Part shown: positions 4,521-63,412 of the stretch, one piece after another
Layout: each line of letters begins with the position of its first letter
How positions within the stretch are numbered: position 1 is the first letter of the stretch
From: Girardia tigrina
Lineage: Eukaryota
Reading direction: 5' to 3'
Length of the DNA stretch: 63,412 bases
Assembly: GCA_001938485.1 (NCBI GenBank)
Contig: MQRK01218860.1
Span: 1 to 63,412 of the forward strand
Notes under the pieces: generated by a model
What the model saw: the letters and a program-made list of their open reading frames with translations, nothing else
What the model was told of the DNA's origin: nothing
The model's database searches: none
Made by a program: the position numbers and the translations under genes

Positions 4521-5921
4521 AATAAGAATTTTGTAAATCAGTTTAAGAATTTTGTATTTCCATTTAAGAAATTCGTCAATTCATTTATGACTTTGTGTAA
4601 ATATTGCGAAATATACAAGTTTACAAATACCTAAATCACAGANNNNNAAACTAAAATGAATAGCTAAAATTTATTTAATTCCCATCATATATTGGTGTTC
4701 TACTCAAACACTTTGGAAGGAATGAAAAGACATTCCTAAAATATCCAGAACAATCTTCAGCCGTTATATATTAACTAAACTTATCTATATAGGCAAATAA
4801 TTCTGCTTCAGAGTTTGGTCGTGATTCACGTATCATTCCTTTCCATTTCGAAAACATATTTTCAATCGGATTGAGGAATGGCGAATACGGTGGCAAAAAC
4901 TTCAATTCGCATATATTTGCATCCACATGCATTGCTAAAAATTTGTATTTTATGGATTGGTGCTTGTGAAATCGGACATTATCCATAATGACCACAGAAC
5001 GACAGATATGTTCATCTTTGATATACTGTAAAATTTCATCGATGAAATTAGCAAAGGTTGCTGTGTTGAACGCCGATGTTTGGGTCACATATTTTACTAT
5101 TCTACCCTTATTCATTGCGCAACATACAGAAATATTCGTTGATCTAAGGCATATCACGTTATGTACAGCTGGTGATCCAGCTAAAGATCGTCCTCTTTTA
5201 CTTCTAATAGAAACATTAAAACCAACTTCATCAACGAAAAATAAATTATTTTCATCAAGATTGGATAAAATGTNNNNNNNNNNNNNNGCATAATCGTATC
5301 TTTCATTCAAGGACTTCTCATCATTTCTACGTTCAGGGATTAATGTTGCAGACTTTAAGGTATAATTAAAGCAACCAATATATCTGTCAATTGTTTTCAG
5401 ACAGACTGCAACATTAAATTTTGAACACAAAAGTCCTTGAATGTGCTGAAGAGTAATTCCGCAATTTTCATCAATTCATGATTTAATGGCATCAACATGG
5501 TCTTCGATTAAAGCTTTTCTTCTTGGTCCTCCTTTCAGTTTTTGTTCAATACTATTTTCTTTCTCGTAGACCTGAATAATCGAATACACTGTTTTATACT
5601 TCAAATTAAGAATTGAAGTAATTTCGATAACAGAATGGTTCGTCATATACGAGTCAATAATCATTTTCTTTATTTCATTACAAACTGCCATATCTAAAGA
5701 AAATATATATGTAGTAAAAAATAAAAAACAGTTTATTCTACTTTACAAATTTAAATAATTATAATTGTAAACTAAATGTATATTTAAACAAATTCCTAAA
5801 TTGATTGTCAAAATTCTTAAACGGATATGCAAAATTCTTAAATTGATTGTCAAAATTCTTAAACGGATTTACAAATTCTGACGTTGAATTACAATTTTCT
5901 GAAATGTGCTGACAAACCCTG
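4521..5921 (-). mobile_element. IS630/Tc1-superfamily DNA transposon, left end truncated
   Basis: Right end reads TA|CAGGGTTTGTCAGC on the - strand. Inverted subterminal repeats: TTTAAGAATTT copies at 4521-4600 and AAATTCTTAAA copies at 5790-5880. Encloses a DDE transposase. Confidence 0.8.
4675..5691 (-). pseudogene. DDE_3 (IS630/Tc1-like) transposase with two in-frame stops
   Basis: ORFs 5476-5691 and 4771-5430 share one frame, which continues to a TAA at 4675. N-terminal HTH region; motifs FVDEVGF, VIMDNVRFH and FLPPYSPFLNPIE. Confidence 0.88.
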
Positions 5922-18504: not shown

Positions 18505-19609
18505 TTATGTTGTCCTAAAAGTTCCCGGTAAAGAATGATAATACAATTTTTTGTGCAAGAATTTATTTTAAATGAATAACAATTAATCGTTTTCGACTAC
18601 TTTCTGCCATTGGTCTGCAAGCTTTCGGATCAAAGTACCATTCCAGCTGCTTCTAATTGAAGAACTCTTGACATACTTGTTCAACTTCATCGAATGCTTC
18701 GAATCGGCGGCCTTTCAACAAGTGTTGCATGGATCGGAAGAGGCAGTAGTCGAATGGAGCGCAATCAGGGCTGTAAGCAGGATGCGGCAGGATTTCGACT
18801 CCATCCAACTCTTGGAACCTGTCCGTGGTCTTCTTGGCGGTATGCGGCTTGGCATTGTCTTGCTGAAGCAGTGCACGTTTTCGGTTGATTAAGGTAACGT
18901 ACTTCTCCTTAAGCTTCTCGTAGACACGGTCCAGCTGTTGACAATAAAGCACTGCATTGATGACCTGGCCGTTTTGAACCAACTCAAAGTGCACGACTCC
19001 CTCAAAATTCCACCAGACGCACAACATAATTTTCAAACCAAATCGATCTTGTTTTGGAACTGACAGTGTCGCTTGACCCGGTGGAAACCATCGCATGTCT
19101 CGGTTGAGGTTGAACTCGATTGTAGTTGTAATGAGTTCGTGTAGATCTTGACGTGGTTTCTTGTACACAAAGTCGAGCTGCTTCAAATGGCAATGTATCG
19201 TGGACTAGCCAACTCCAAGCTTAAATGCCAAATCGCGAGTGTTTGACGAAGGCTTCATGTTCAACTCTGCTTGCAAGTCATCGTTATCAAATTTTGTTGG
19301 TCCTCCATAACGAGAACTGTCATTCAAGTCAAAGTTGCCTTTATTTAAACACTTGAACCAATCACTTGCCGTACTTTTTCCGACCATTTGTGTGCCTTCA
19401 ACTTTGCAAATTGTCTTGGCAGCATCTCGTGTAGTCAAGGCTTTCTTCCAATAGTGACGCAGCAACAGACGGATTTCAAGCTTTGTAATCTCGAAGTCCA
19501 TATAATGCTATAAATAAATCGATGTATATCAATATCAAATAAATAATGCCAAAAAAATTTGAAAAAATTTTATTTTCATTATTGACCGGGAACTTTTAGG
19601 ACAACCTAT
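18505..19609 (-). mobile_element. mariner element with internal deletion
   Basis: TIRs GTTGTCCTAAAAGTTCCCGGT / ACCGGGAACTTTTAGGACAAC with TA flanks. Transposase pieces 19205-19501 and 18653-19186 carry LQQDNAKPH and HPAYSPDCAPFDY (DD34D type). Confidence 0.92.
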
Positions 19610-24585: not shown

Positions 24586-26029
24586 GGTACGCCGACTTTA
24601 CCGCGGCGACTTTACCGCGGACGACTTTACCGCAGGTGACTTTACAGTGGGCGACTTTACCGCGGAAAACTTACAAAAAAATTGTCAATAAGTGAATAAT
24701 GTCATCTAAAATATGAATAAAAATTTTTAATTATGTTATGATAAAACAATGAATCATACACAGGTTTAATTTTAAAACATAAATGAATAGAAAATTTCAG
24801 ATCGACATTACATTTAATTATTCTTTTTAATNNNNNNNNNNNNNNNNNNNNNNNNNNNNNNNNNNNNNNNNNNTAATTTAAAAAATTCAAAAAACATTCT
24901 AGAACAAATGAATAACACACCAAAAAAAATTGATGTGTAAATAGAAGAAAGATACAAAAACATTAAACTGATATATTAAAATAATGGAATAGTAAATATA
25001 TACTTTAATCCAAAAATTTTAAATTATGAGCAACGCCTCTAAGATAATCTAATATTGGTAAATTATTGTATTGCTCAACGACACATTCAATCCTCTCACT
25101 TACTTTGGCATAAATTTGCGATGAGAATTGTGGGAATTCTTCNNNNNNNNNNNNNNNNNNNNNNNNNNNNNNNNNNNNNNNNNNNNNNNNNNNNNNNNNN
25201 NNNNNNNNNNNNNNNNNNNNNNNNNNNNNNNNNNNNNNNNNNNNNNNNGAATTTTGAAACGCACGATGCCAATTTTCTATTGCATTGTTTGTGCTTGGTA
25301 GATGAGAAATAACGCCGTCATATACATTCCAACACTGAATTGAATATCGAGGACGTAATCTTCGTTCTTCATGAGCACGGTCAATATATGTATCCTCGAA
25401 ATATGCAAAGACATCATCGAGTTCTGCATAATCATTGGAAAGATCAAGTAAAACAAAAAAGGCAGTGAAAACATCATCCACAGGAACAAACGCTAAGGCC
25501 ATTTTTGATTTCAGAATGGTTCTTATTTCATCATTGTTTGAATAAGATTTGATGTTTCTTTTATTTTTTCCAAATTGATTGGTTCCGATGAAAATAAAAC
25601 AGCCTTTAATCCAAGCGATGAGAATAGCTTGCATACGCAACAATAGGATTTCCAGATTTTGAAGTAAAGAATTGAAGATTCATGCTGAAAAAAGTGAGAA
25701 AATTTTTTAGAAATTTATAATATTTTAAGGTATATTTTTAAAGGTATATTAACGTAAATGGAAAATTTTATTATAAATATTACTCCGAGTATATTTTAAT
25801 AAAGTATTATTCGGTAATAATGGCAAAAAAATATATAAAAATTAAAAATTTTAAGAAAATTGAATTTATTTAATTATTTAATATTAATATTATAAATTTT
25901 TAATATTTTTTCTGAAAAAATCCGCGGTAAAGTCGTCCGCGGTAAAGTCGCCGCGGTAAAGTCGTCCGCGGTAAAGTCGCCGCGGTAAAGTCGTCCGCGG
26001 TAAAGTCGCCGCGGTAAAGTCGCCTCACC
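24586..26029 (-). mobile_element. MULE (Mutator-like) element with minisatellite TIRs
   Basis: Perfect 9-bp TSD GTCTAATCT (24577-24585 and 26030-26038). TIRs built of CGACTTTACCGCGG repeats. Partial transposase 25005-25643 with MALAFVP, YFEDTYI and STNNAIENWH. Confidence 0.92.
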
Positions 26030-30649: not shown

Positions 30650-30773
30650 TGTAGCGACAACGAAAATAAAATTTTTATTAAATCAAAAAAACTCGCTTTC
30701 AATATTTCTGCCAAACATTAGTTCACTTAAACAAACTGTTTTTTGCATCACAAATAATTAACTCTATACAACA
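30650..30773 (-). repeat. 3' LTR
   Basis: TGTAG...TACAACA; aligns with 34358-34491. Confidence 0.85.
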
Positions 30774-33653
30774 TCCCCACCAGATTCGTCAGAACACGAA
30801 TCNNNNNNNNNNNNNNNNNNNNNNNNNNNNNNNNNNNNNNNNNNNNNNNNNNNNNNNNNNNNNNNNNNNNNNNNNNNNNNNNNNNNNNNNNNNNNNNNNN
30901 NNNNNNNNNNNNNNNNNNNCGTTCTCCGGCTCAACTCTCCTCGGCCGTAAATCACCGACATGCCGAGGGAAACTCGATCCATTGCATTCCACTAAATATT
31001 TACAGTTCGAAAGTTCTTTCAAAATCTGACCTTTTAACCATTGCTGCGTGTAACTTATACTACTCATTGGTTTCACCCAAACTAACTGATGATCACAATA
31101 CTTCGCACCTTTCTTCCTCATTTCGAACTTATTGTCGCTTTCGCNNNNNNNNNNNNNNNNNNNNNNNNNNNNNNNNNNNNNNNNNNNNNNNNNNNNNNNN
31201 NNNNNNNNNNNNNNNNNNNNNNNNNNNNNNNNNNNNNNNNNNNNNNNNNNNNNNNNNNNNNNNNNNNNNNNNNNNNNNNNNNNNNNNNNNNNNNNNNNNN
31301 NNNNNNNNNNNNNNNNNNGGTTGATTGCACGATAAATTACCTCGACTCTCCAACCGTTGCAAAGTTCTATAAAATCGTTTGAATAAAAAGTCGTATAATT
31401 ATCCACAATCAGTTCTCTGGGCGCTCCGCACTCCAAAAACACAGAACTTACTGCCGCGGTGATAGAAAGTGAACTTTCATCCCGAATTTCTTTCCATATC
31501 GCAAATCTGGATGGTCCGCAATCGATGAAGCTTAAATACTTATCTCCATTGAATTTGGTGACATATATTACTAATCTTTGCCAGGTCTCCCTAACAGATA
31601 AACCACCGCGATCCCATCTAACCGGTGCGGGATCAATTGACTGGCATTTCTGGCACTTCGCAATCATGTTCGAAATATCTTTATCTGTGACATTAATATT
31701 TTCAATTTTGCAAAGGAACTTCATTCTTTTTGTTCCCAAGTGGCACTTCAAATGAAGATCGTTCAGTCTTTCAATTTCACTCGCCAAAGCGACACCGCAT
31801 ACACTTTTAGTCAGCTCCTTCGGAATTCTCATCAGTACATCTGCTTTATTCAGCTTGCTTGGCACAAACTCTATTCTAATGGTTAAATTAAAATCATCGC
31901 AAATTTCTTTAATAATGGATAACCGCCGTCTGATGAGCAATTCTGAAAAAGCACTCGTGTTTAGTCGAGACTTACTTGTTAAAACGTCATTCACCCAGGC
32001 AACCATAGATTTGTTATCACACTTCACTGTGATGTCTGTCATACACCATTTCACGCATAAATTCAACCCCCTAACAACCGCTTCCAACTCCACAATATTG
32101 ATGTGCCGTGAATCGTCCTTTTTCCTTAACCAAGATCCATCCTCGATGATTTTACGATTAACTTCCAGCAAAACCCCCAACGCAATTAAACTAGCATCGC
32201 ACCACAGAGTACACGTTTTGCATTCTCCAATGCTCCACGTGCCTCGACAAGGGTCATTTTCTGCAACTCTTTCCAAGATCCATTTCATCTTCTCCATCAT
32301 CGACATGTCCACTGGTGAGTCCCAATCACCCTCCGATGCTCGTTTGAGATGAGAACATGCCAATCGTAACCATAACGCCACAGGGTAGATGTCAGTAAGT
32401 TGTCCGCATAGAGAATAAAGCTGTCGCCGTGACATCGGTTCAGATAAATCTTCGACGCGAATCCGATTCGCGTTCCCGTTGATGTTGTTGACTTCCAATC
32501 CAAGCACTCTCACTTTTGTGTCACGATTAACACGTTCAGGTTGTTTGCACTCTAACCCAAAACTCCTGAATAGATGCTTTACTTCTTCAGCACTAACTAT
32601 CGTTTCATCGACAAAAATATCGTCGGCATAGGAACCCGTGGCGACGTTATTCCTTTGGTCAAAAGACAACACCTTTCTAACAATTTCCGACATAATTGTA
32701 GGAGCGATATTCAAACGGAATCCCATACGCGTCAACGCGAACTTCTTTCCGTTGATCGTACACGACTGAAACCGCCACATTGCTTGATGTACACGGATTT
32801 ACATGTAAGCATCGGATAGATCCAGAATTGCGAATTTATTGCTCTTCCTTTTCCACTCCCAAAGTATTTCCACACAAGCATCGGAACACCCACTGTAAAC
32901 ATCGATGTTCTTGTTCACTTCTCTAAAGTCGTACACGGGTCTTATTTTCTCTTTATTCAACTGGGCTATACCATAGATAAGAATCGATCCCACTGACGCG
33001 CCCATCTTCTCATCATCATATTCGACTAAATACCCCTTCTCTATCCACTTGATCAGAATATCCATCGTTGATTTGTCTTTCGACTTTGACTCCTTCAAAA
33101 CTGTATTTCTCGGCAAGTACTCAGGCGCATCCGATTTCAAACTCCAGGAAACAGTCCACACTTTATCGAATCGAATATTGAAATTATACTTATTCATATC
33201 TCCGCTTTCGGTGATAGCTGCCTCTGATGAATCACCTCTCTCACCAGACATACAAAAACTTGCTGAACCAGTGTCCACCCCAAATTTCACGCGGTCGTTA
33301 TTGAGCGTCACCCCGCCTAATTTCTCGATCATGTCAACACCCAATAACACATCAAAATTTTCGGGCAACCTGTTCATAACTGTACAATTTAAAGTTACTT
33401 TTTTATCCTTCACGTCAAATACAACGGCACACGTGCCTACTGGCACCCGCAACCCGTTGGCTAACGTGACGTTTTCCTGCTGCTGCTGTATTGATTCTTC
33501 ATCCACAAGACATCTTTTCACAACCGAACGAGAGCATCCGGTATCCACTAACACTCTACAGCTTTTTCCGTTCACAACGCATCGAATCACCGGAAGCGCC
33601 TTTAATCCCCACGAGAAGCCGTTGGCGCTGACGACCCCTCGCTCGCATTTTCC
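30764..33653 (-). pseudogene. pol: pol polyprotein (protease, RT, RNase H, integrase) with one nonsense codon at 32799-32801
   Basis: LVDTGCS (protease); LDLSDAY, LTRMGF and SYADD (RT); WCDAS, HINIVELEAV and NKADVL (RNase H); H..H...C..C and IVDN (integrase). ORFs 32799-33701 and 30789-32780 share a frame. Confidence 0.88.
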
Positions 33654-34345
33654 GCTCTGCAAAATCTCGCAATATGTCCTTTTCGATGACATTTGAAACA
33701 TATCATGTTACTCCTTTGGGAAAAATTTTTAGAGCGACCCTCGTCCGCATTTCGACGACCCGTATCGACGCCCTCACCTGACTTATTAAAACGGTGGTCG
33801 TCGCGGACGCTGCCGCCATCTGCTCCTTTCAAATGATTGGATCTGTCTAAATCATTTAAACTCACCATCGACGTATTACACATGCTCTGCATGATACTCA
33901 TATATGTTCGGCTTACTTCCACAATTTCGTGCCATTCTCGTCTCTCGATTTCCAACGCAATCTCCGATGGCAATCCAGCTAGAAATGCGGCAATCTCTAG
34001 GCTCTTCACCGTCTTCGCTAACTTCGACACTTCCGCGGCATACTCATCGATGGTGTGATAATCTGAATATTTAATATTCTGTAATCTGCAATACGCCTCC
34101 CGCGGTCGTACGCCAAACGCCAAATTCATCACACGGAACACTTCCTCAATGTTCCTTTGCTGCTTCTCCGACATCTCCATATAAACGCTAAGTGTCGGTC
34201 CGGTCAACAAAAACGGGAATAGCATGGCGGCGTCCTTAATCTGTTGCATCGATGTCAGCAGAACGAATTGTTTCCTCCATAGTTCCCATGATTTCTGCCC
34301 ATCGAACTTCTCGAGACAGTCGAGAATTACTTTTACGTTTGACAT
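33602..34345 (-). CDS. gag: gag with CCHC zinc knuckle
   Basis: ATG at 34345, 12 nt after the LTR; EKFDG...WELW..QF motif; CFKCHRKGHIARFC knuckle. Confidence 0.88.
   Translation of the reverse strand: MSNVKVILDCLEKFDGQKSWELWRKQFVLLTSMQQIKDAAMLFPFLLTGPTLSVYMEMSEKQQRNIEEVFRVMNLAFGVRPREAYCRLQNIKYSDYHTIDEYAAEVSKLAKTVKSLEIAAFLAGLPSEIALEIERREWHEIVEVSRTYMSIMQSMCNTSMVSLNDLDRSNHLKGADGGSVRDDHRFNKSGEGVDTGRRNADEGRSKNFSQRSNMICFKCHRKGHIARFCRAENASEGSSAPTASRGD
33610..33653 (-). promoter_or_regulatory. candidate -1 ribosomal frameshift signal (gag-pol)
   Basis: G GAA AAT followed 5 nt later by the 11-bp stem CGAGGGGUCGU / ACGGCUUCUCG; pol is in the -1 frame relative to gag. Confidence 0.6.
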
Positions 34346-34357
34346 GCCCGGATAGCT
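34346..34357 (-). promoter_or_regulatory. primer-binding site complementary to the 5' 12 nt of tRNA-Lys(UUU)
   Basis: + strand GCCCGGATAGCT equals nt 1-12 of metazoan tRNA-Lys(UUU) and abuts the 5' LTR with no spacer. Confidence 0.7.
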
Positions 34358-34491
34358 TGTAGTGACGATAAGACCAACGACAATATATTTTTTAATTACA
34401 CAAGAATAACTCGATTTCAATAATTCTGCCAAAAGTTAGCTCATTCAAACAAAATCTCTTTTTACATCAAAATAATTAACTCTCTACAACA
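34358..34491 (-). repeat. 5' LTR
   Basis: TGTAG...TACAACA; aligns with 30650-30773. Confidence 0.85.
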
Positions 34492-41153: not shown

Positions 41154-41821
41154 ATGGAATCCAAACAAAATACTTCTTCTCCGTCAACAAGTGGAACCTC
41201 GGTCATTAGAATCAAGTATAAGGACGGGGTTATTGTGGCCGCCGACATGCTCTGTTCTTACGAATCTATCGCCAAATTTAGTGACATTGAAAGAATTCAC
41301 AAAATCAACAATACAAACGTTCTCGGTTTTACTGGGGATATCGCAGATTTTCAATATCTTCACGGTATTATTAAAGAGAAAGTACACAATGACCGTTTAG
41401 AAACTGACGAGTTCGAAATGACTCCGAATAGTTTACACAGTTTTATCACTCGTGTTCTTTATAATCGACGAACGAAAATTGATCCTTTATGGAATTCTAA
41501 CATTGTCGCTGGATTCGTCAATAACAAATCGTTCCTAGGATATGCTGATATGAAAGAAGTGTCTTTTGAAGACAAGACTTGCGCTACTGGTTATGGTAAA
41601 TTCATGGCAATGCCCAAACTACGAGATGTTGCTAGAATTTGCCTGAGGAGGACGCGAAAATCGCAATAATCGATGCGTTGAAAGTGTTGTATTATCGAGA
41701 TTGTCGCGCCAGTCTCAAATACCAAATGGTAGTGATCGACAAAGACGGTGTCCGACTGACTGGACCTCACATCCTGAAGACGAATTGGGAAGTTGCTCAT
41801 TACGTTTCTGGTTATGAATAA
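41154..41821 (+). pseudogene. PSMB4: processed pseudogene of proteasome subunit beta type-4 (beta7)
   Basis: GTSVIRIKYKDGVIVAADM...GDIADFQYL...DPLWN...ATGYG...VLYYRD...TNWEVAHYVSGYE. Intronless; frameshift/deletion near 41635; conserved Gly residues replaced (GSYGS to CSYES); AATAAA at 41881 and A-rich tail at ~41897-41910. Confidence 0.9.
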
Positions 41822-57424: not shown

Positions 57425-58712
57425 TTAGGCTGAACCAAAAGTATTTTCGTATTGTCTACGTCTCTTTGTTCAATTGCTTCTTATTACCAAATAAAGATAT
57501 TTTATATACATGTGTTATGTTTTTAAAGCTCTTGAACTGCTCTATCACAATATATATTAAAACTTCTTATTAGTCCTTAATATAATTTTTATGGTCTTTT
57601 AGAAAAATCATGGAAATTTTTGAAATTCGTGTTCTTTTACGCCATTACTGGAAACATGGCTTAAACGCAACTGCAGTAACAAAGAAAATATGCGAAGTTG
57701 AAGACGATAATGTGGTCTCAAATCGTACTGCACAAAATTGGTTCAAAAGGTTCAACGAAGGCGACATTGACCTCGGAGACAAGGCACGTTCAGACCGACC
57801 TATCACCGTAGATTCCGGAGTAATTCGTGAAGCCGTCGAGACAAATCCGTCAATAAGTACTTGCAGATTGTCGGCCGATCACGATATTCCTCAAACATCC
57901 ATAGTACGACACATTCACGCTCTTGGCAAGGTCAATAGACGATGTCGAGAAGTGCCTCATGAATTGACACAAATTCAAGCCGAAAAGCGTTTCGAAACTT
58001 GTCAAAAATTGCTTGAAAATCGGCGCGATGACCGTTTCATTCGTCGAATTGTAACTTGCGATGAAAAGTGGGTTTACTTCAGTAATCCAGACTAACAAAA
58101 TCAATGGTTTGACCCCGCACAAATGGCGAAACCGGTAGCGAAACGAGATCGTTTTCCTACAAGAAAGGCACTTTTGTGTGTTTGGTGGAATTTCGAAGGC
58201 GTGATTCCCTTCGAGCTGGTTCCAAATGGTCGTACCATCGACGCTGACCTTTACTGCACCCAACTTGATCGAATGTATGTAGCACTTGGCGAGAAATACC
58301 CCGCTTTGATCAATCGAAAGCGAGTTCTTCTACAACAGGACAATGCAAAACCGCACACCGTCAAATAAACAAAGGAAAAAATCAAAAATCTCGATGCCTT
58401 TGAACTTCTTCCACACCCAGCGTATAGTCCGGATCTTGCGCCATCCGACTATCACATTTTCCGCTCTATGGCACACTTTCTTCGTGGTCGCAGCTTCAAT
58501 AATCTGACCGAGGTCGAAAACTGGTGTCACCAGTTCTTCGCTTCTAAGAGCAAGGATTGGTACCGCAGCGGGATCGCACAACTTGCCCATAGATGGGTTC
58601 AAGCTATAGATTCAAATGGCCTTTACTTTGAAACTTAAATGTTTTTTATTTGTTGTAAAATTATGTTTAAATTTTTAATAAAAAATACGGAAAGACTTTT
58701 CGTTCACCTTAA
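57425..58712 (+). mobile_element. full-length mariner element (~1.29 kb)
   Basis: Imperfect TIRs TTAGGCTGAACCAAAAGTATTTTCGTATT / AATACGGAAAGACTTTTCGTTCACCTTAA with TA flanks. Confidence 0.92.
57610..58638 (+). pseudogene. mariner DD34D transposase with two nonsense codons (58093 and 58366)
   Basis: Single frame of 343 codons; VPHEL, IVTCDEKW, QQDNAKPH and HPAYSPDLAPSDYHIF motifs. Confidence 0.92.
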
Positions 58713-60939: not shown

Positions 60940-63412
60940 AATAAATATATTTGGACAGCCACGACAGTTAGTACAACATGGGGGACAAACAGGCTTAATG
61001 GTGTGTGGATACATCAAAGCTCTGATGGAGAATCGACCGCTAAGTTCTATTGATGTTCAGACACTCAAATGACAGATCGCGGCCCAACTAATCAGAGCCA
61101 AGAAGAAGCGCCCCACATCATCCATTCAACAGAAAGAGAACCACACCACTCTTAATGCAACCCGCGCAGCGAGAGTGGAAAGGTCACTCACCTTTGCGGA
61201 AGTCCGATCACTGACTGTGGATCCTAAGATATTGGAAAGGGATATAACAATGTACAATGTATATCTACTCCTTTAGACCCATAAAACGGAGAAATCTCTA
61301 TATGGGCAACAAGGTTGTAGAATCCACTAATCAGGATCCAAGTCTTAGGAAGGCCTATAAAACTCACCCAAGAAGAGCGGTCCAAATCATCCTAAACAAC
61401 ACAGTTGCAGATACCACTCCATCGACAGAAGCAATCATGGAACATTTTAGCTCAAAATCGATTGCCCCTCCAATTAGTGAATTAGTGGATACTCTCTTGG
61501 TGAAGAGAGGGGATCCATTTGAATTCAGAGAGGTCCTGTCTGGTGAGGTGGTAGAAGCAATGAACAACGCCAACAACTCATCCCCGGATTACTCAAATAT
61601 AACATATAAAGATATGTTATATTGTGACCCGGTGGGTGCAATGTACACCAAGCTGTACAACCGGATTATCAACAGTCGAGTTATCCCGAAGAGCTGGAGG
61701 GAGTTCTTTACAACCCTCCTTCCGAAACCGGGAAAACAAGGACAATATGACCAAGTTTCATCGTGGCGACCAATAGCTCTCTTAGAGTGTGCCTATAAGA
61801 TTTTGGCCATACTTCTAAGAGACCAATTAAACAAGTGGATTGTGGATAATGACCTCTTACACCCACTCCAGAAAAGTCTGGGTCCCCATGACGGTTGCGC
61901 CGAACACAACTTTGTCATCCGGGCCATCCTAGATAAATATTACTATCAACTAAAAGGAGCAGAGTTCCACGCGACAATGCTAGACAATGCTGATGCATTT
62001 GGCTAAGTGTCGGTGGAAATCATCCTTAAATTATTAAGACGAATGGGTGTAGGAGCGGACTCGTGTGACCTGATCAGACAGCTATACAACGACTGCTTAT
62101 CGGCGTACAAATGTGACAACACGGTGACGGGGCAGATTCCGATTTTAGTGGGAGTCAGGCAAGGATGTCCACTCTCAATGTTGCTATTTAATATTGCTAT
62201 TAACCCTGTACTGTTGGAATTGGACCAACAGTCTTATGGCGGCATGTTAATAGCCAATCACCGTGTGAGTTGCCTGGCCTATGCTGATGACCTTGTGTTG
62301 CTAGCTGATAATCANNNNNNNNNNNNNNNNNNNNNNNNNNNNNNNNNNNNNNNNNNNNNNNNNNNNNNNATTAAATTCAGACCTTCCAAATGTTCACGAA
62401 TAGCGATCCCACATAACCCAAACAATAGGATCCAAATATATGGGAACGCTATCCCCGAAATTACCGAAGGTGAATTCGTTGTATATTTGGAAGGTCACTT
62501 TTCCGAAAATATTAAGTTAGCACCAGTAGAGAAGCTTGCAGAAGTTACTAGGGAAACAATTAAGATTACAGAATCTATACTGTTTCCCTGGCAGAAACTG
62601 CACGCTTACATNNNNNNNNNNNNNNNNNNNNNNNNNNNNNNNNNNNNNNNNNNNNNNNNNNNNNNNNNNNNNNNNNNNNNNNNNNNNNNNNNNNNNNNNN
62701 NNGTTATCAGACTGTTGCACAAGAAGGTGTTGGGATTGCAGAAAAACGCATCGAATGCGTATCTCTACACGCCAAGGGAAAATGGTGGAGTCGGTATTAA
62801 ATCGCTACTCGATGAGTACCTGATATAATCACTGGCCCACGCTTTCTAAATGATTGCGTGTAGTGATGCGACAACGATGGATGCTGCAATCTTCTCCCTT
62901 CAACGTGGAGCGGCTGGCCCCCGGAAAACGCGACTCTTATCGATTGAGGAGGCCATTAACTGGCTTAACGCCGGAACTCAATCGGGAGGATCAAGAACTG
63001 GTGGGCCAAGATCAAATTTGCCATCCACAAAATCAAAGAACTGCACCAGATCTCAGCTAGTCTGGTGCAGAATGAGAGAGGCATTTGTCTACACCTTCAC
63101 CAATNNNNNNNNNNNNNNNNNNNNNNNNNNNNNNNNNNNNNNNNNNNNNNNNNNNNNNNNNNNNNNGAAAACATACTCCTCACCCCCCTCCTAAAATCCA
63201 GTGTGTCCAAGACACTAAGAAGACTAGTGGAAAAATCTTGGACGCACAAATGGAATGTCCAAAACAGTGCTGGTCGATTTGCAAGAAGCCTGAAATCGAC
63301 GATTAGCTTTCACAGTGCTGTCTATGGGGGGGAGCTCAACTATGCTGAGTGGTATTTTTACCACAAAGCATTTACATACACGGTGCCAGTCAACTTCCGA
63401 CCAGGAATCACC
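60940..63412 (+). mobile_element. RLE-type (NeSL/R2-like) non-LTR retrotransposon RT region, with stops, running off the window
   Basis: WRPIALL, GCAEHNF, LDNADAFG*V, GVRQGCPLS, LAYADDL, PWQKL and YLYTPRENGGVG motifs in ORFs 61257-62006 and 62007-62828. Confidence 0.9.

What the first reader, a model, noticed from the sequence alone, without database searches (positions are those of the whole stretch)
34346..34357. LTR retrotransposon primer site matches the first 12 nt of tRNA-Lys(UUU): priming by a tiny 5' tRNA fragment?
Seen: on the element strand the 5' LTR ends ...CTACA and is followed immediately by AGCTATCCGGGC and then the gag ATG, with no TGG. The complement is GCCCGGATAGCT. Established: this is nt 1-12 of metazoan tRNA-Lys(UUU) (GCCCGGAUAGCUCAGUCGG...). 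Typical PBSs pair with the tRNA 3'-CCA end; known exceptions use an anticodon-cleaved tRNAiMet half (copia, Ty5) or self-priming (Tf1). The match starts exactly at tRNA nucleotide 1, ends flush with the LTR and fills the whole leader. The AT-rich LTR has no such sequence, which argues against self-priming. Inference: minus-strand DNA is primed by a ~12-nt 5' fragment cut in the D-stem, possibly by the element's own RNase H as in Tf1. I do not know of a description of this mode, but could not check the literature.
Basis: partly seen in the sequence, partly recalled or inferred. Interest (0 to 1): 0.9.

Follow-up and report, generated by a model that had tools for sequence, protein, structure and literature searches.

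The report
Retrotransposon primer site matching tRNA 5' ends
A small, decayed LTR retrotransposon in this window, and about fifty relatives from other genomes, carry directly after the left LTR a 12-base site that pairs with the first 12 bases of a tRNA instead of its 3' end, which points to a way of starting reverse transcription that I could not find described.

Summary
On the minus strand a 134-bp LTR ends in CA at 34358. The 12-mer occupies 34357-34346, and the gag ATG follows at 34345. Its complement equals bases 1-12 of mouse and zebrafish tRNA-Lys(UUU), but also of E. coli tRNA-Phe, so the isotype in this unknown host stays open.

The element is an old 3.8-kb copy (LTRs about 81% identical) of a large, very compact family with the order gag, PR-RT-RNaseH-IN.

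- **Close relatives:** four of six carry the same 12-mer exactly; the other two differ by one base.
- **Distant relatives:** about 44, with gag only 20-28% identical, have a 12-mer at the same place. This includes copies with 96-100% identical LTRs.
- **Pattern of change:** only the columns facing acceptor-stem bases 4-6 (once 7) vary. The variants fall into a few discrete classes.
- **Class identities:** three classes equal the 5' ends of Lys(UUU), Lys(CUU) and Phe(GAA).
- **Rivals excluded:** no copy has a TGG-type site, and none has a self-complement in its LTR.

The best reading is a primer-binding site for a 12-nt 5' tRNA fragment. The cut after base 12 is inferred, not shown. I found no prior description.

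The parts
34358..34491 (-). 5' LTR, 134 bp, TG...CA ends
   Evidence: It aligns to the 3' LTR at about 80% identity. Near-identical LTRs occur in L002, L101 and L182.
34346..34357 (-). 12-nt primer-binding site, complementary to bases 1-12 of a tRNA (Lys-UUU type in vertebrates)
   Evidence: Searches give its place and uniqueness in the window. Searches give the tRNA match. Searches show the same position in about 50 relatives.
33602..34345 (-). gag ORF, 247 aa, one CCHC zinc knuckle; no break seen
   Evidence: It is 92% identical to P0223 and 65% identical to P0224.
30764..33701 (-). pol: protease, RT (YADD), helical thumb (Pfam DUF7047), RNase H, integrase. It overlaps gag in another frame, as in relatives. 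It is broken by one in-frame stop. Two masked N runs lie inside it, and frame continuity across them cannot be judged. In relatives the stop codon lies inside the first bases of the 3' LTR.
30774..30781 (-). purine-rich tract (plus-strand primer site) directly before the 3' LTR, inside the pol coding region
   Evidence: G-rich tracts lie at the same place in relatives.
30650..30773 (-). 3' LTR, 124 bp, ends CTACA and is followed by unrelated flank

Best explanation
The 12 bases are the minus-strand primer-binding site of a compact LTR retrotransposon, and the primer is the 5'-terminal 12 nucleotides of a host tRNA.

**Shown**
- The site starts at the first base after the LTR.
- It is exactly complementary to tRNA bases 1-12. 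These are the 5' strand of the acceptor stem, then U8 and A9, then the first three bases of the D-stem.
- Complementarity stops at the LTR on one side and at tRNA base 1 on the other.
- Across the family the site changes only where tRNAs differ from one another, and it jumps between a few discrete versions.

**Inferred**
- Only a 3'-OH at tRNA base 12 can be extended into U5, so the tRNA must be cut between bases 12 and 13.
- The cut is made either by a host nuclease or, as in Tf1, by the element's own RNase H acting at the end of the RNA-RNA duplex.
- Plus-strand strong-stop synthesis would then copy the whole 12-nt primer and run off its 5' end. That would set the site length without needing a modified-base stop.
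- The gag zinc knuckle would help to unwind the tRNA.

The window copy itself is old and broken. Relatives with identical LTRs look recently active.
For: **Position**
- There are zero bases between the LTR end and the 12-mer in the window.
- The same holds in nine other full copies, eight of them with LTR pairs 96-100% identical (L085: 93%). These include a barnacle genome copy with 100% identical 398-bp LTRs and a 5-bp target duplication.
- The distance to the gag ATG varies from 0 to about 45 nt, so the motif is anchored to the LTR and not to gag.

**Identity**
- Window class: Lys-TTT bases 1-12 in mouse and zebrafish.
- L043 class: Lys-CTT bases 1-12.
- The largest class: Phe-GAA bases 1-12 in human and Drosophila.
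- The four remaining classes each start real tRNA genes in phage contigs.

**Conservation**
- In an unbiased extraction of the 60 nt before gag, 28 of 32 loci show the motif although gag is only 20-28% identical.
- In 44 distinct contexts, columns 1-6 and 10-12 are the same in 43-44 and only columns 7-9 vary.
- Classes switch inside pol clusters of 60% identity or more.

**Alternatives absent**
- No TGG-type site is present.
- No complement of the site occurs in the upstream 350 nt (at most 8 of 12 bases, no better than shuffles) or anywhere in the locus.

**Enzymes**
- The RNase H DEDD, RT and integrase catalytic residues are kept in 38 of 38 relatives.
Against: - No tRNA gene of any host was recovered, so no pairing partner has been seen in the same genome.
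- Four of the seven classes have no known eukaryotic partner.
- Two close relatives (L002, L085) carry a mismatch at the LTR-proximal end of the site. A primer's 3' end is most sensitive there, and L085 does not look old.
- A cut inside a D-stem that leaves exactly 12 nt is not a known tRNA processing event. The usual short 5' fragments are 14-16 nt (one search lists a 14-nt one).
- All evidence is comparative. No replication intermediate has been seen.
Confidence: 0.75

Rival explanations
1. Tf1-like self-priming: the site pairs with the 5' end of the element's own transcript, which is cut to give the primer.
For: The site is short (12 nt against 11 in Tf1), there is no TGG, and the primer would pair over its whole length. 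Self-priming is known from fungi to vertebrates.
Against: The window has no second copy of the complement even at 2 mismatches. In 44 loci the upstream 350 nt match at most 8 of 12 bases, no better than shuffled sites. Nothing better than 10 of 12 is found anywhere in the loci. The LTRs are unalignable between subfamilies while the site stays the same.
Confidence: 0.03
2. The site binds a primer, but the primer is another small RNA that merely shares the tRNA-like start, for example a tRNA-derived repeat transcript or a tRNA precursor product.
For: Only 12 bases are constrained. Four classes have no identified eukaryotic tRNA.
Against: Three classes equal bases 1-12 of named tRNAs exactly. Complementarity ends at tRNA base 1 in all classes. 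The invariant columns are the ones that are conserved among tRNAs.
Confidence: 0.07
3. The motif binds a tRNA for a purpose other than priming, such as packaging or control of gag translation, and DNA synthesis starts in some other way.
For: The site abuts or nearly abuts the gag start codon in many copies. The cut that priming needs is unobserved.
Against: It always sits at base +1 after the LTR, which is the defining place of a primer-binding site, while its distance to gag varies. No other candidate site exists: in the window the leader is only these 12 bases.
Confidence: 0.1
4. Chance, or decay of a normal TGG-type site in this one old copy.
For: The window copy is old: its LTRs are about 81% identical and pol is broken.
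Against: The same site is present in copies with 96-100% identical LTRs and open pol genes and in about 50 loci overall.
Confidence: 0.01

Closest known systems
Tf1/Tj1-type self-primed LTR retrotransposons of fission yeasts and relatives
   Same: Both use a very short RNA primer (11 nt there, 12 here) that pairs with the site over its whole length. Both have no TGG. In both, the primer must be released by an endonucleolytic cut at the end of an RNA-RNA duplex, which in Tf1 is made by the element's RNase H (titles and text cited).
   Different: There the primer is the 5' end of the element's own mRNA. Here no such complement exists, and the partner has the sequence of tRNA 5' ends, with switches between tRNAs.
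Half-tRNA priming of copia, Ty5, Osser and Bianca lineages
   Same: In both, the primer is a 5' piece of a tRNA made by cleavage, not the CCA end.
   Different: In those lineages the cut is in the anticodon stem and the site pairs with internal bases next to it. The tRNA is initiator Met or Ile, and the elements are Ty1/copia with IN before RT. Here the site pairs with bases 1-12, the cut would be in the D-stem, several tRNAs are used, and the gene order is PR-RT-RH-IN.
Canonical priming by the 3' end of a whole tRNA (retroviruses, Ty1, Ty3, gypsy)
   Same: Both use a host tRNA as partner. The site lies directly after U5. Switching between tRNAs occurs among relatives (for ETn).
   Different: This site uses the opposite end of the tRNA. 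It has no TGG, it is 12 nt instead of about 11-18 nt ending at CCA, and the tRNA must be cut.
Odin retrotransposons and lokiretroviruses (dual RNase H lineages, PMC9040795)
   Same: Both are env-less gag-pol elements of marine invertebrates whose RNase H scores with cellular-type RNase H models.
   Different: In the model of P0004 the three thumb helices (DUF7047) run straight into the RNase H, with no tether domain. That paper mentions neither primer sites nor tRNA. No Odin sequence was compared.

Membership tests
LTR retrotransposon | Two direct LTRs with TG...CA ends, a primer site at base +1 after the 5' LTR, and a purine tract before the 3' LTR | tested here: met
   Relatives show 5-bp target duplications (L083, L084, L034). 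None is recognisable for the old window copy.
LTR retrotransposon | gag with a zinc knuckle, and pol with protease, RT, RNase H and integrase | tested here: met
   Catalytic residues are kept in 38 of 38 relatives.
Ty3/gypsy (Metaviridae) | Gene order PR-RT-RH-IN | tested here: met
Ty3/gypsy (Metaviridae) | Ty3-type RNase H (Pfam RT_RNaseH / RT_RNaseH_2) | tested here: not met
   0 of 34 pols match. The RNase H scores with RVT_3 (31 of 34) and RNase_H (6 of 34) instead.
Ty3/gypsy (Metaviridae) | RT groups inside the Ty3/gypsy clade in a phylogeny | not tested
   No reference set was at hand. The profile search finds HIV, foamy virus and Ty3 pol proteins at similar E-values of about 1e-11 to 1e-12; the retroviral matches lie in RT, and the Ty3 row's best stretch lies in integrase. 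The fold search lists only retroviral PR-RT among the 50 rows shown, at 11-13% identity.
Bel/Pao | Pfam Peptidase_A17, DUF1758, DUF1759 and DUF5641 signatures | tested here: not met
   0 of 34, and none among the precomputed domains of the 120 listed hits.
Ty1/copia with half-tRNA primer | IN before RT; site pairs with tRNA bases next to the anticodon stem | tested here: not met
   IN lies after RNase H. The site pairs with bases 1-12.
Tf1/sushi self-priming group | Site complementary to the 5' end of the element's own transcript within the LTR | tested here: not met
Tf1/sushi self-priming group | The element's RNase H cuts an RNA duplex to free the primer | not testable with these tools
   Only the presence and conservation of the RNase H active site could be shown.
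Canonical 3'-CCA tRNA priming | Site begins TGG within a few bases of the LTR | tested here: not met
Dual-RNase-H lineages (retroviruses, lokiretroviruses, Odin) | A degenerate RNase H (tether or connection domain) between the RT thumb and the active RNase H | tested here: not met
   In the model of P0004, helices 416-472 (DUF7047, pLDDT about 90) are followed by the first RNase H strand at 487. This rests on a predicted structure only.
5'-tRNA-end primed elements (the class proposed here) | A host tRNA starts with the exact complement of the site | tested here: inconclusive
   This is true for vertebrate and Drosophila tRNAs taken from papers. No tRNA gene from any host genome of the elements was obtained.

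The most novel reading that the evidence does not exclude
A widespread clade of the smallest known autonomous LTR retrotransposons (3.8-4.6 kb) in aquatic and other invertebrates starts reverse transcription from the first 12 nucleotides of tRNAs, freed by a cut in the D-stem. This would be a fourth priming mode beside whole tRNA, anticodon-cut half tRNA and self-priming. It would make short 5' tRNA fragments direct players in retroelement replication or control.
Probability: 0.6. Interest if true: 0.85.

Novelty: new variant of a known kind. Interest (0 to 1): 0.8.

Why it matters
Reviews list three kinds of minus-strand primer for LTR elements: a whole tRNA, a tRNA half cut in the anticodon stem, and a self-primer. 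A 12-nt 5' tRNA end would be a fourth kind. It sits between the copia and Tf1 solutions.

It has practical consequences. Annotation tools that look for sites complementary to tRNA 3' ends (my knowledge of how they work) would score this whole family as lacking a primer site. Yet the family is large: 487 proteins matched among the 8000 candidates scored, many from metagenomes.

It also bears on the small-RNA field. 3' tRNA fragments are known to target primer sites (PMC7472051). Here the complementary partners would be 5' fragments.

Finally, the family shows how far an autonomous LTR element can be compacted. The pol stop codon lies inside the LTR, the purine tract lies inside pol, and gag starts right after the primer site.

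Tried and rejected
**Host identity.** The only host exon found, a proteasome beta subunit at 41154-41669, is at most 48% identical to anything in the database. The window's gag is not on record. Cluster members carry no organism names, and sample accessions appear in no paper.

**Host tRNA genes.** ARAGORN found none in the window or in 62 family loci, including 20-kb flanks in the barnacle genome. Rfam found nothing in the window.

**tRNA identity of four classes.** No paper prints their complements. Scans of viral contigs show that they do start real tRNA genes, but those are phage genes. This shows only that they look like tRNA starts.

**Dual RNase H idea.** I dropped it after the structure model.

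**Fold and sequence searches against solved structures.** They gave only generic retroviral and Ty3 matches and cannot place the lineage.

**Literature searches.** Searches for an earlier description of a site matching a tRNA 5' end found none. The library lacks most subscription journals, so this does not prove absence.

Full report
**Observation.** On the minus strand the window reads LTR end ...CACTACA, then the 12-mer of the finding at 34357-34346, then the gag ATG at 34345. The 5' LTR (34491-34358, 134 bp) aligns with a 3' LTR (30773-30650) at about 80% identity. The 3' copy ends with the same CTACA but runs into unrelated DNA. The 12-mer is therefore the first internal sequence and not part of the LTR. 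A G-rich purine tract lies directly before the 3' LTR. The complement of the 12-mer occurs nowhere else in the window at up to 2 mismatches. The window holds no tRNA gene and no Rfam match.

**The element.** gag (34345-33602) is open and has one CCHC knuckle. pol (33701-30764) encodes protease, RT with a YADD motif, Pfam DUF7047, an RNase H that scores with RVT_3, and an integrase.
- pol carries one in-frame stop.
- It holds two masked N runs, which I did not fill. Frame continuity across them cannot be judged.
- gag and pol overlap in different frames, as in intact relatives, so I do not count the overlap as a break.
- With LTRs 81% identical, this copy is old and dead.
- The unit is only about 3.84 kb.
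- In relatives the pol stop lies in the first bases of the LTR and the purine tract lies inside pol.

**The family.** The pol piece finds 487 proteins among the 8000 candidates scored, mostly 900-1000 aa on contigs of 3.5-4.5 kb. One is annotated in the barnacle Amphibalanus amphitrite.
- Across 34 pols, DUF7047 matches in 34, rve in 33, RVT_3 in 31 and RVT_1 in 31. None matches the Ty3-type RNase H, Bel/Pao or copia models.
- RT, RNase H (DEDD) and integrase (HHCC, DDE) residues are kept in 38 of 38.
- A model of the intact relative P0004 (mean pLDDT 80) shows DUF7047 as three thumb helices running straight into the RNase H, with no tether domain.
- Profile and fold searches find retroviral PR-RT and Ty3 pol at similar distance; the Ty3 match lies mainly in integrase, and the fold search shows retroviral hits only.
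- I therefore file it as an unplaced, very compact lineage with the gypsy/retrovirus gene order.

**The 12-mer in close relatives.** Copies with gag at least 90% identical were recovered from four other samples. L101, L182 and L183 have the identical 12-mer after the LTR, and L002 differs at one base. L100 belongs to a sister subfamily, with gag 65% identical and a quite different LTR, and has the identical 12-mer. L085 has pol 52% identical and both LTRs present, and differs at one base. Both variants change the LTR-proximal end of the site.

**The 12-mer in distant relatives.** I fetched 80 metagenome loci with a pol alignment and located gag by tblastn.
- The 60 nt before the gag ATG were printed without any motif filter. 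In 28 of 32 loci a 12-mer follows a CA. It is identical to the window's in columns 1-6 and 10-12.
- Three of the remaining loci have near variants (L062, L064, L065). In the fourth, L007, the site lies further upstream, 249 nt before the called gag ATG.
- In 44 distinct contexts collected with a pattern search, columns 1-6 and 10-12 agree in 43-44 and only columns 7-9 vary. This count is partly circular, because the pattern fixed those columns. One search is the unbiased view.

**Position relative to the LTR and to gag.**
- The distance to the gag ATG ranges from 0 to about 45 nt.
- The distance to the LTR end is zero in every full copy where both LTRs are present: L010, L025, L034, L038, L055, L083, L084 and L085.
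- Those LTR pairs are 93-100% identical.
- The barnacle copy L083 has 398-bp LTRs that are 100% identical and a 5-bp target duplication.
- The site is therefore a feature of young copies, not a product of decay.

**What the site is complementary to.**
- Window class: bases 1-12 of mouse Lys-TTT fragments and the target of a zebrafish Lys-TTT probe.
- L043 class: Lys-CTT bases 1-12.
- Largest class, including the barnacle copy: Phe-GAA in human and Drosophila.
- Those probes continue with the complement of tRNA bases 13-15, whereas the elements continue with the LTR end. Pairing therefore stops at base 12.
- After the base facing tRNA base 1, the sequences diverge.
- Four further classes are not printed in any paper I could search. 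Each starts genuine tRNA genes in phage contigs, mostly Phe and Thr. This shows they have the form of tRNA starts but says nothing about the hosts.
- E. coli tRNA-Phe begins with the window's complement too, so 12 bases do not fix the isotype.

**Switching.** Site classes change inside pol clusters of at least 60% identity. For example, L045 differs from L037, L038 and L059, and several pairs alternate between two classes that differ by one base. LTRs and leaders are otherwise unalignable across the family. A discrete set of versions, reused in different branches, fits selection by trans-acting partners.

**Rivals.**
- Self-priming fails. In 44 loci the upstream 350 nt match the complement in at most 8 of 12 positions, which is no better than shuffled sites, and nothing better than 10 of 12 exists anywhere in the loci.
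- A lost TGG site is excluded by the young copies.
- A non-priming role cannot be excluded, but it does not explain the fixed zero distance to the LTR.

**Mechanism.** Shown: the place, the complementarity, its limits, its conservation and its switching. Inferred: only a 3'-OH at tRNA base 12 can be extended into U5, so the tRNA must be cut between bases 12 and 13, inside the D-stem. Tf1 sets a precedent for an element's RNase H cutting an RNA duplex to free an 11-nt primer. Copia sets one for a cleaved 5' tRNA piece. Copying the whole 12-nt primer would give the plus-strand stop and the site length.

**Literature.** A systematic plant survey names three primer types only. The Odin paper does not mention primer sites. 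Five searches found no description of a site matching a tRNA 5' end. The library is incomplete, so novelty is probable, not certain.

- Relatives were fetched only by similarity to the finding's own proteins.
Retroviral names appear only as rows of search tables.
Each tblastn comparison used a single segment.
- The masked runs were not filled. L002 and L182 were read for their LTR junctions, and nothing from them was carried over.

- None of the recalled letters went into a tool. The tRNA evidence above comes from papers and loci.
- The place of the stop is not given here, though ORF bounds in my calls touch it.
- My notes and scripts contain degenerate search patterns for the 12-mer and the purine tract.

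Noticed in passing
window 24586-24682 and 25905-26029: Two arrays of a 14-15 bp unit lie in inverted orientation, up to 48 nt at 94-100% complementarity and about 1.3 kb apart. They flank an ORF of 212 aa (25005-25643, minus strand) that has no Pfam match. This looks like a small DNA transposon or foldback element with subterminal repeats.
   Followed up: partly
window 4771-5430, 18653-19186, 57610-58095, 62007-62828: The window is rich in other mobile elements: two Tc1/mariner-type DDE ORFs, a Mos1-type HTH ORF and a separate reverse-transcriptase ORF.
   Followed up: no
window 41154-41669: The only clear host exon is a proteasome beta subunit. It is at most 48% identical to any protein in the database, so the host has no close sequenced relative there.
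   Followed up: partly
L006, L014, L015, L026: These contigs carry the internal region plus one LTR twice, at 4.01-4.06 kb spacing. They are either tandem LTR-internal-LTR-internal arrays or assembly walks around collapsed LTRs.
   Followed up: partly
L055 1842-1853: The window's exact 12-mer occurs in GC-rich flanking DNA with no LTR context. The expectation over all loci is about 0.04, so this is probably chance.
   Followed up: partly
window 34358-34380 versus 30650-30665: The 5' LTR carries about 10 extra bases near its end compared with the 3' LTR. Relatives L002, L101 and L182 share the longer form, so the 3' LTR has probably lost them.
   Followed up: no
L083 8329-12938 (A. amphitrite, GCA_019059575.1): This full copy has 100% identical 398-bp LTRs and the target duplication GTATT. 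It is annotated in the genome as an ordinary gene (LOC122378020) and is probably a very recent insertion.
   Followed up: partly
L062 about 1400-1423; L064/L065 about 60-83 and 1950-1970: These loci have atypical sites. L062 has a 12-mer whose complement has a different D-stem start. L064 and L065 have a version altered at its last bases.
   Followed up: no
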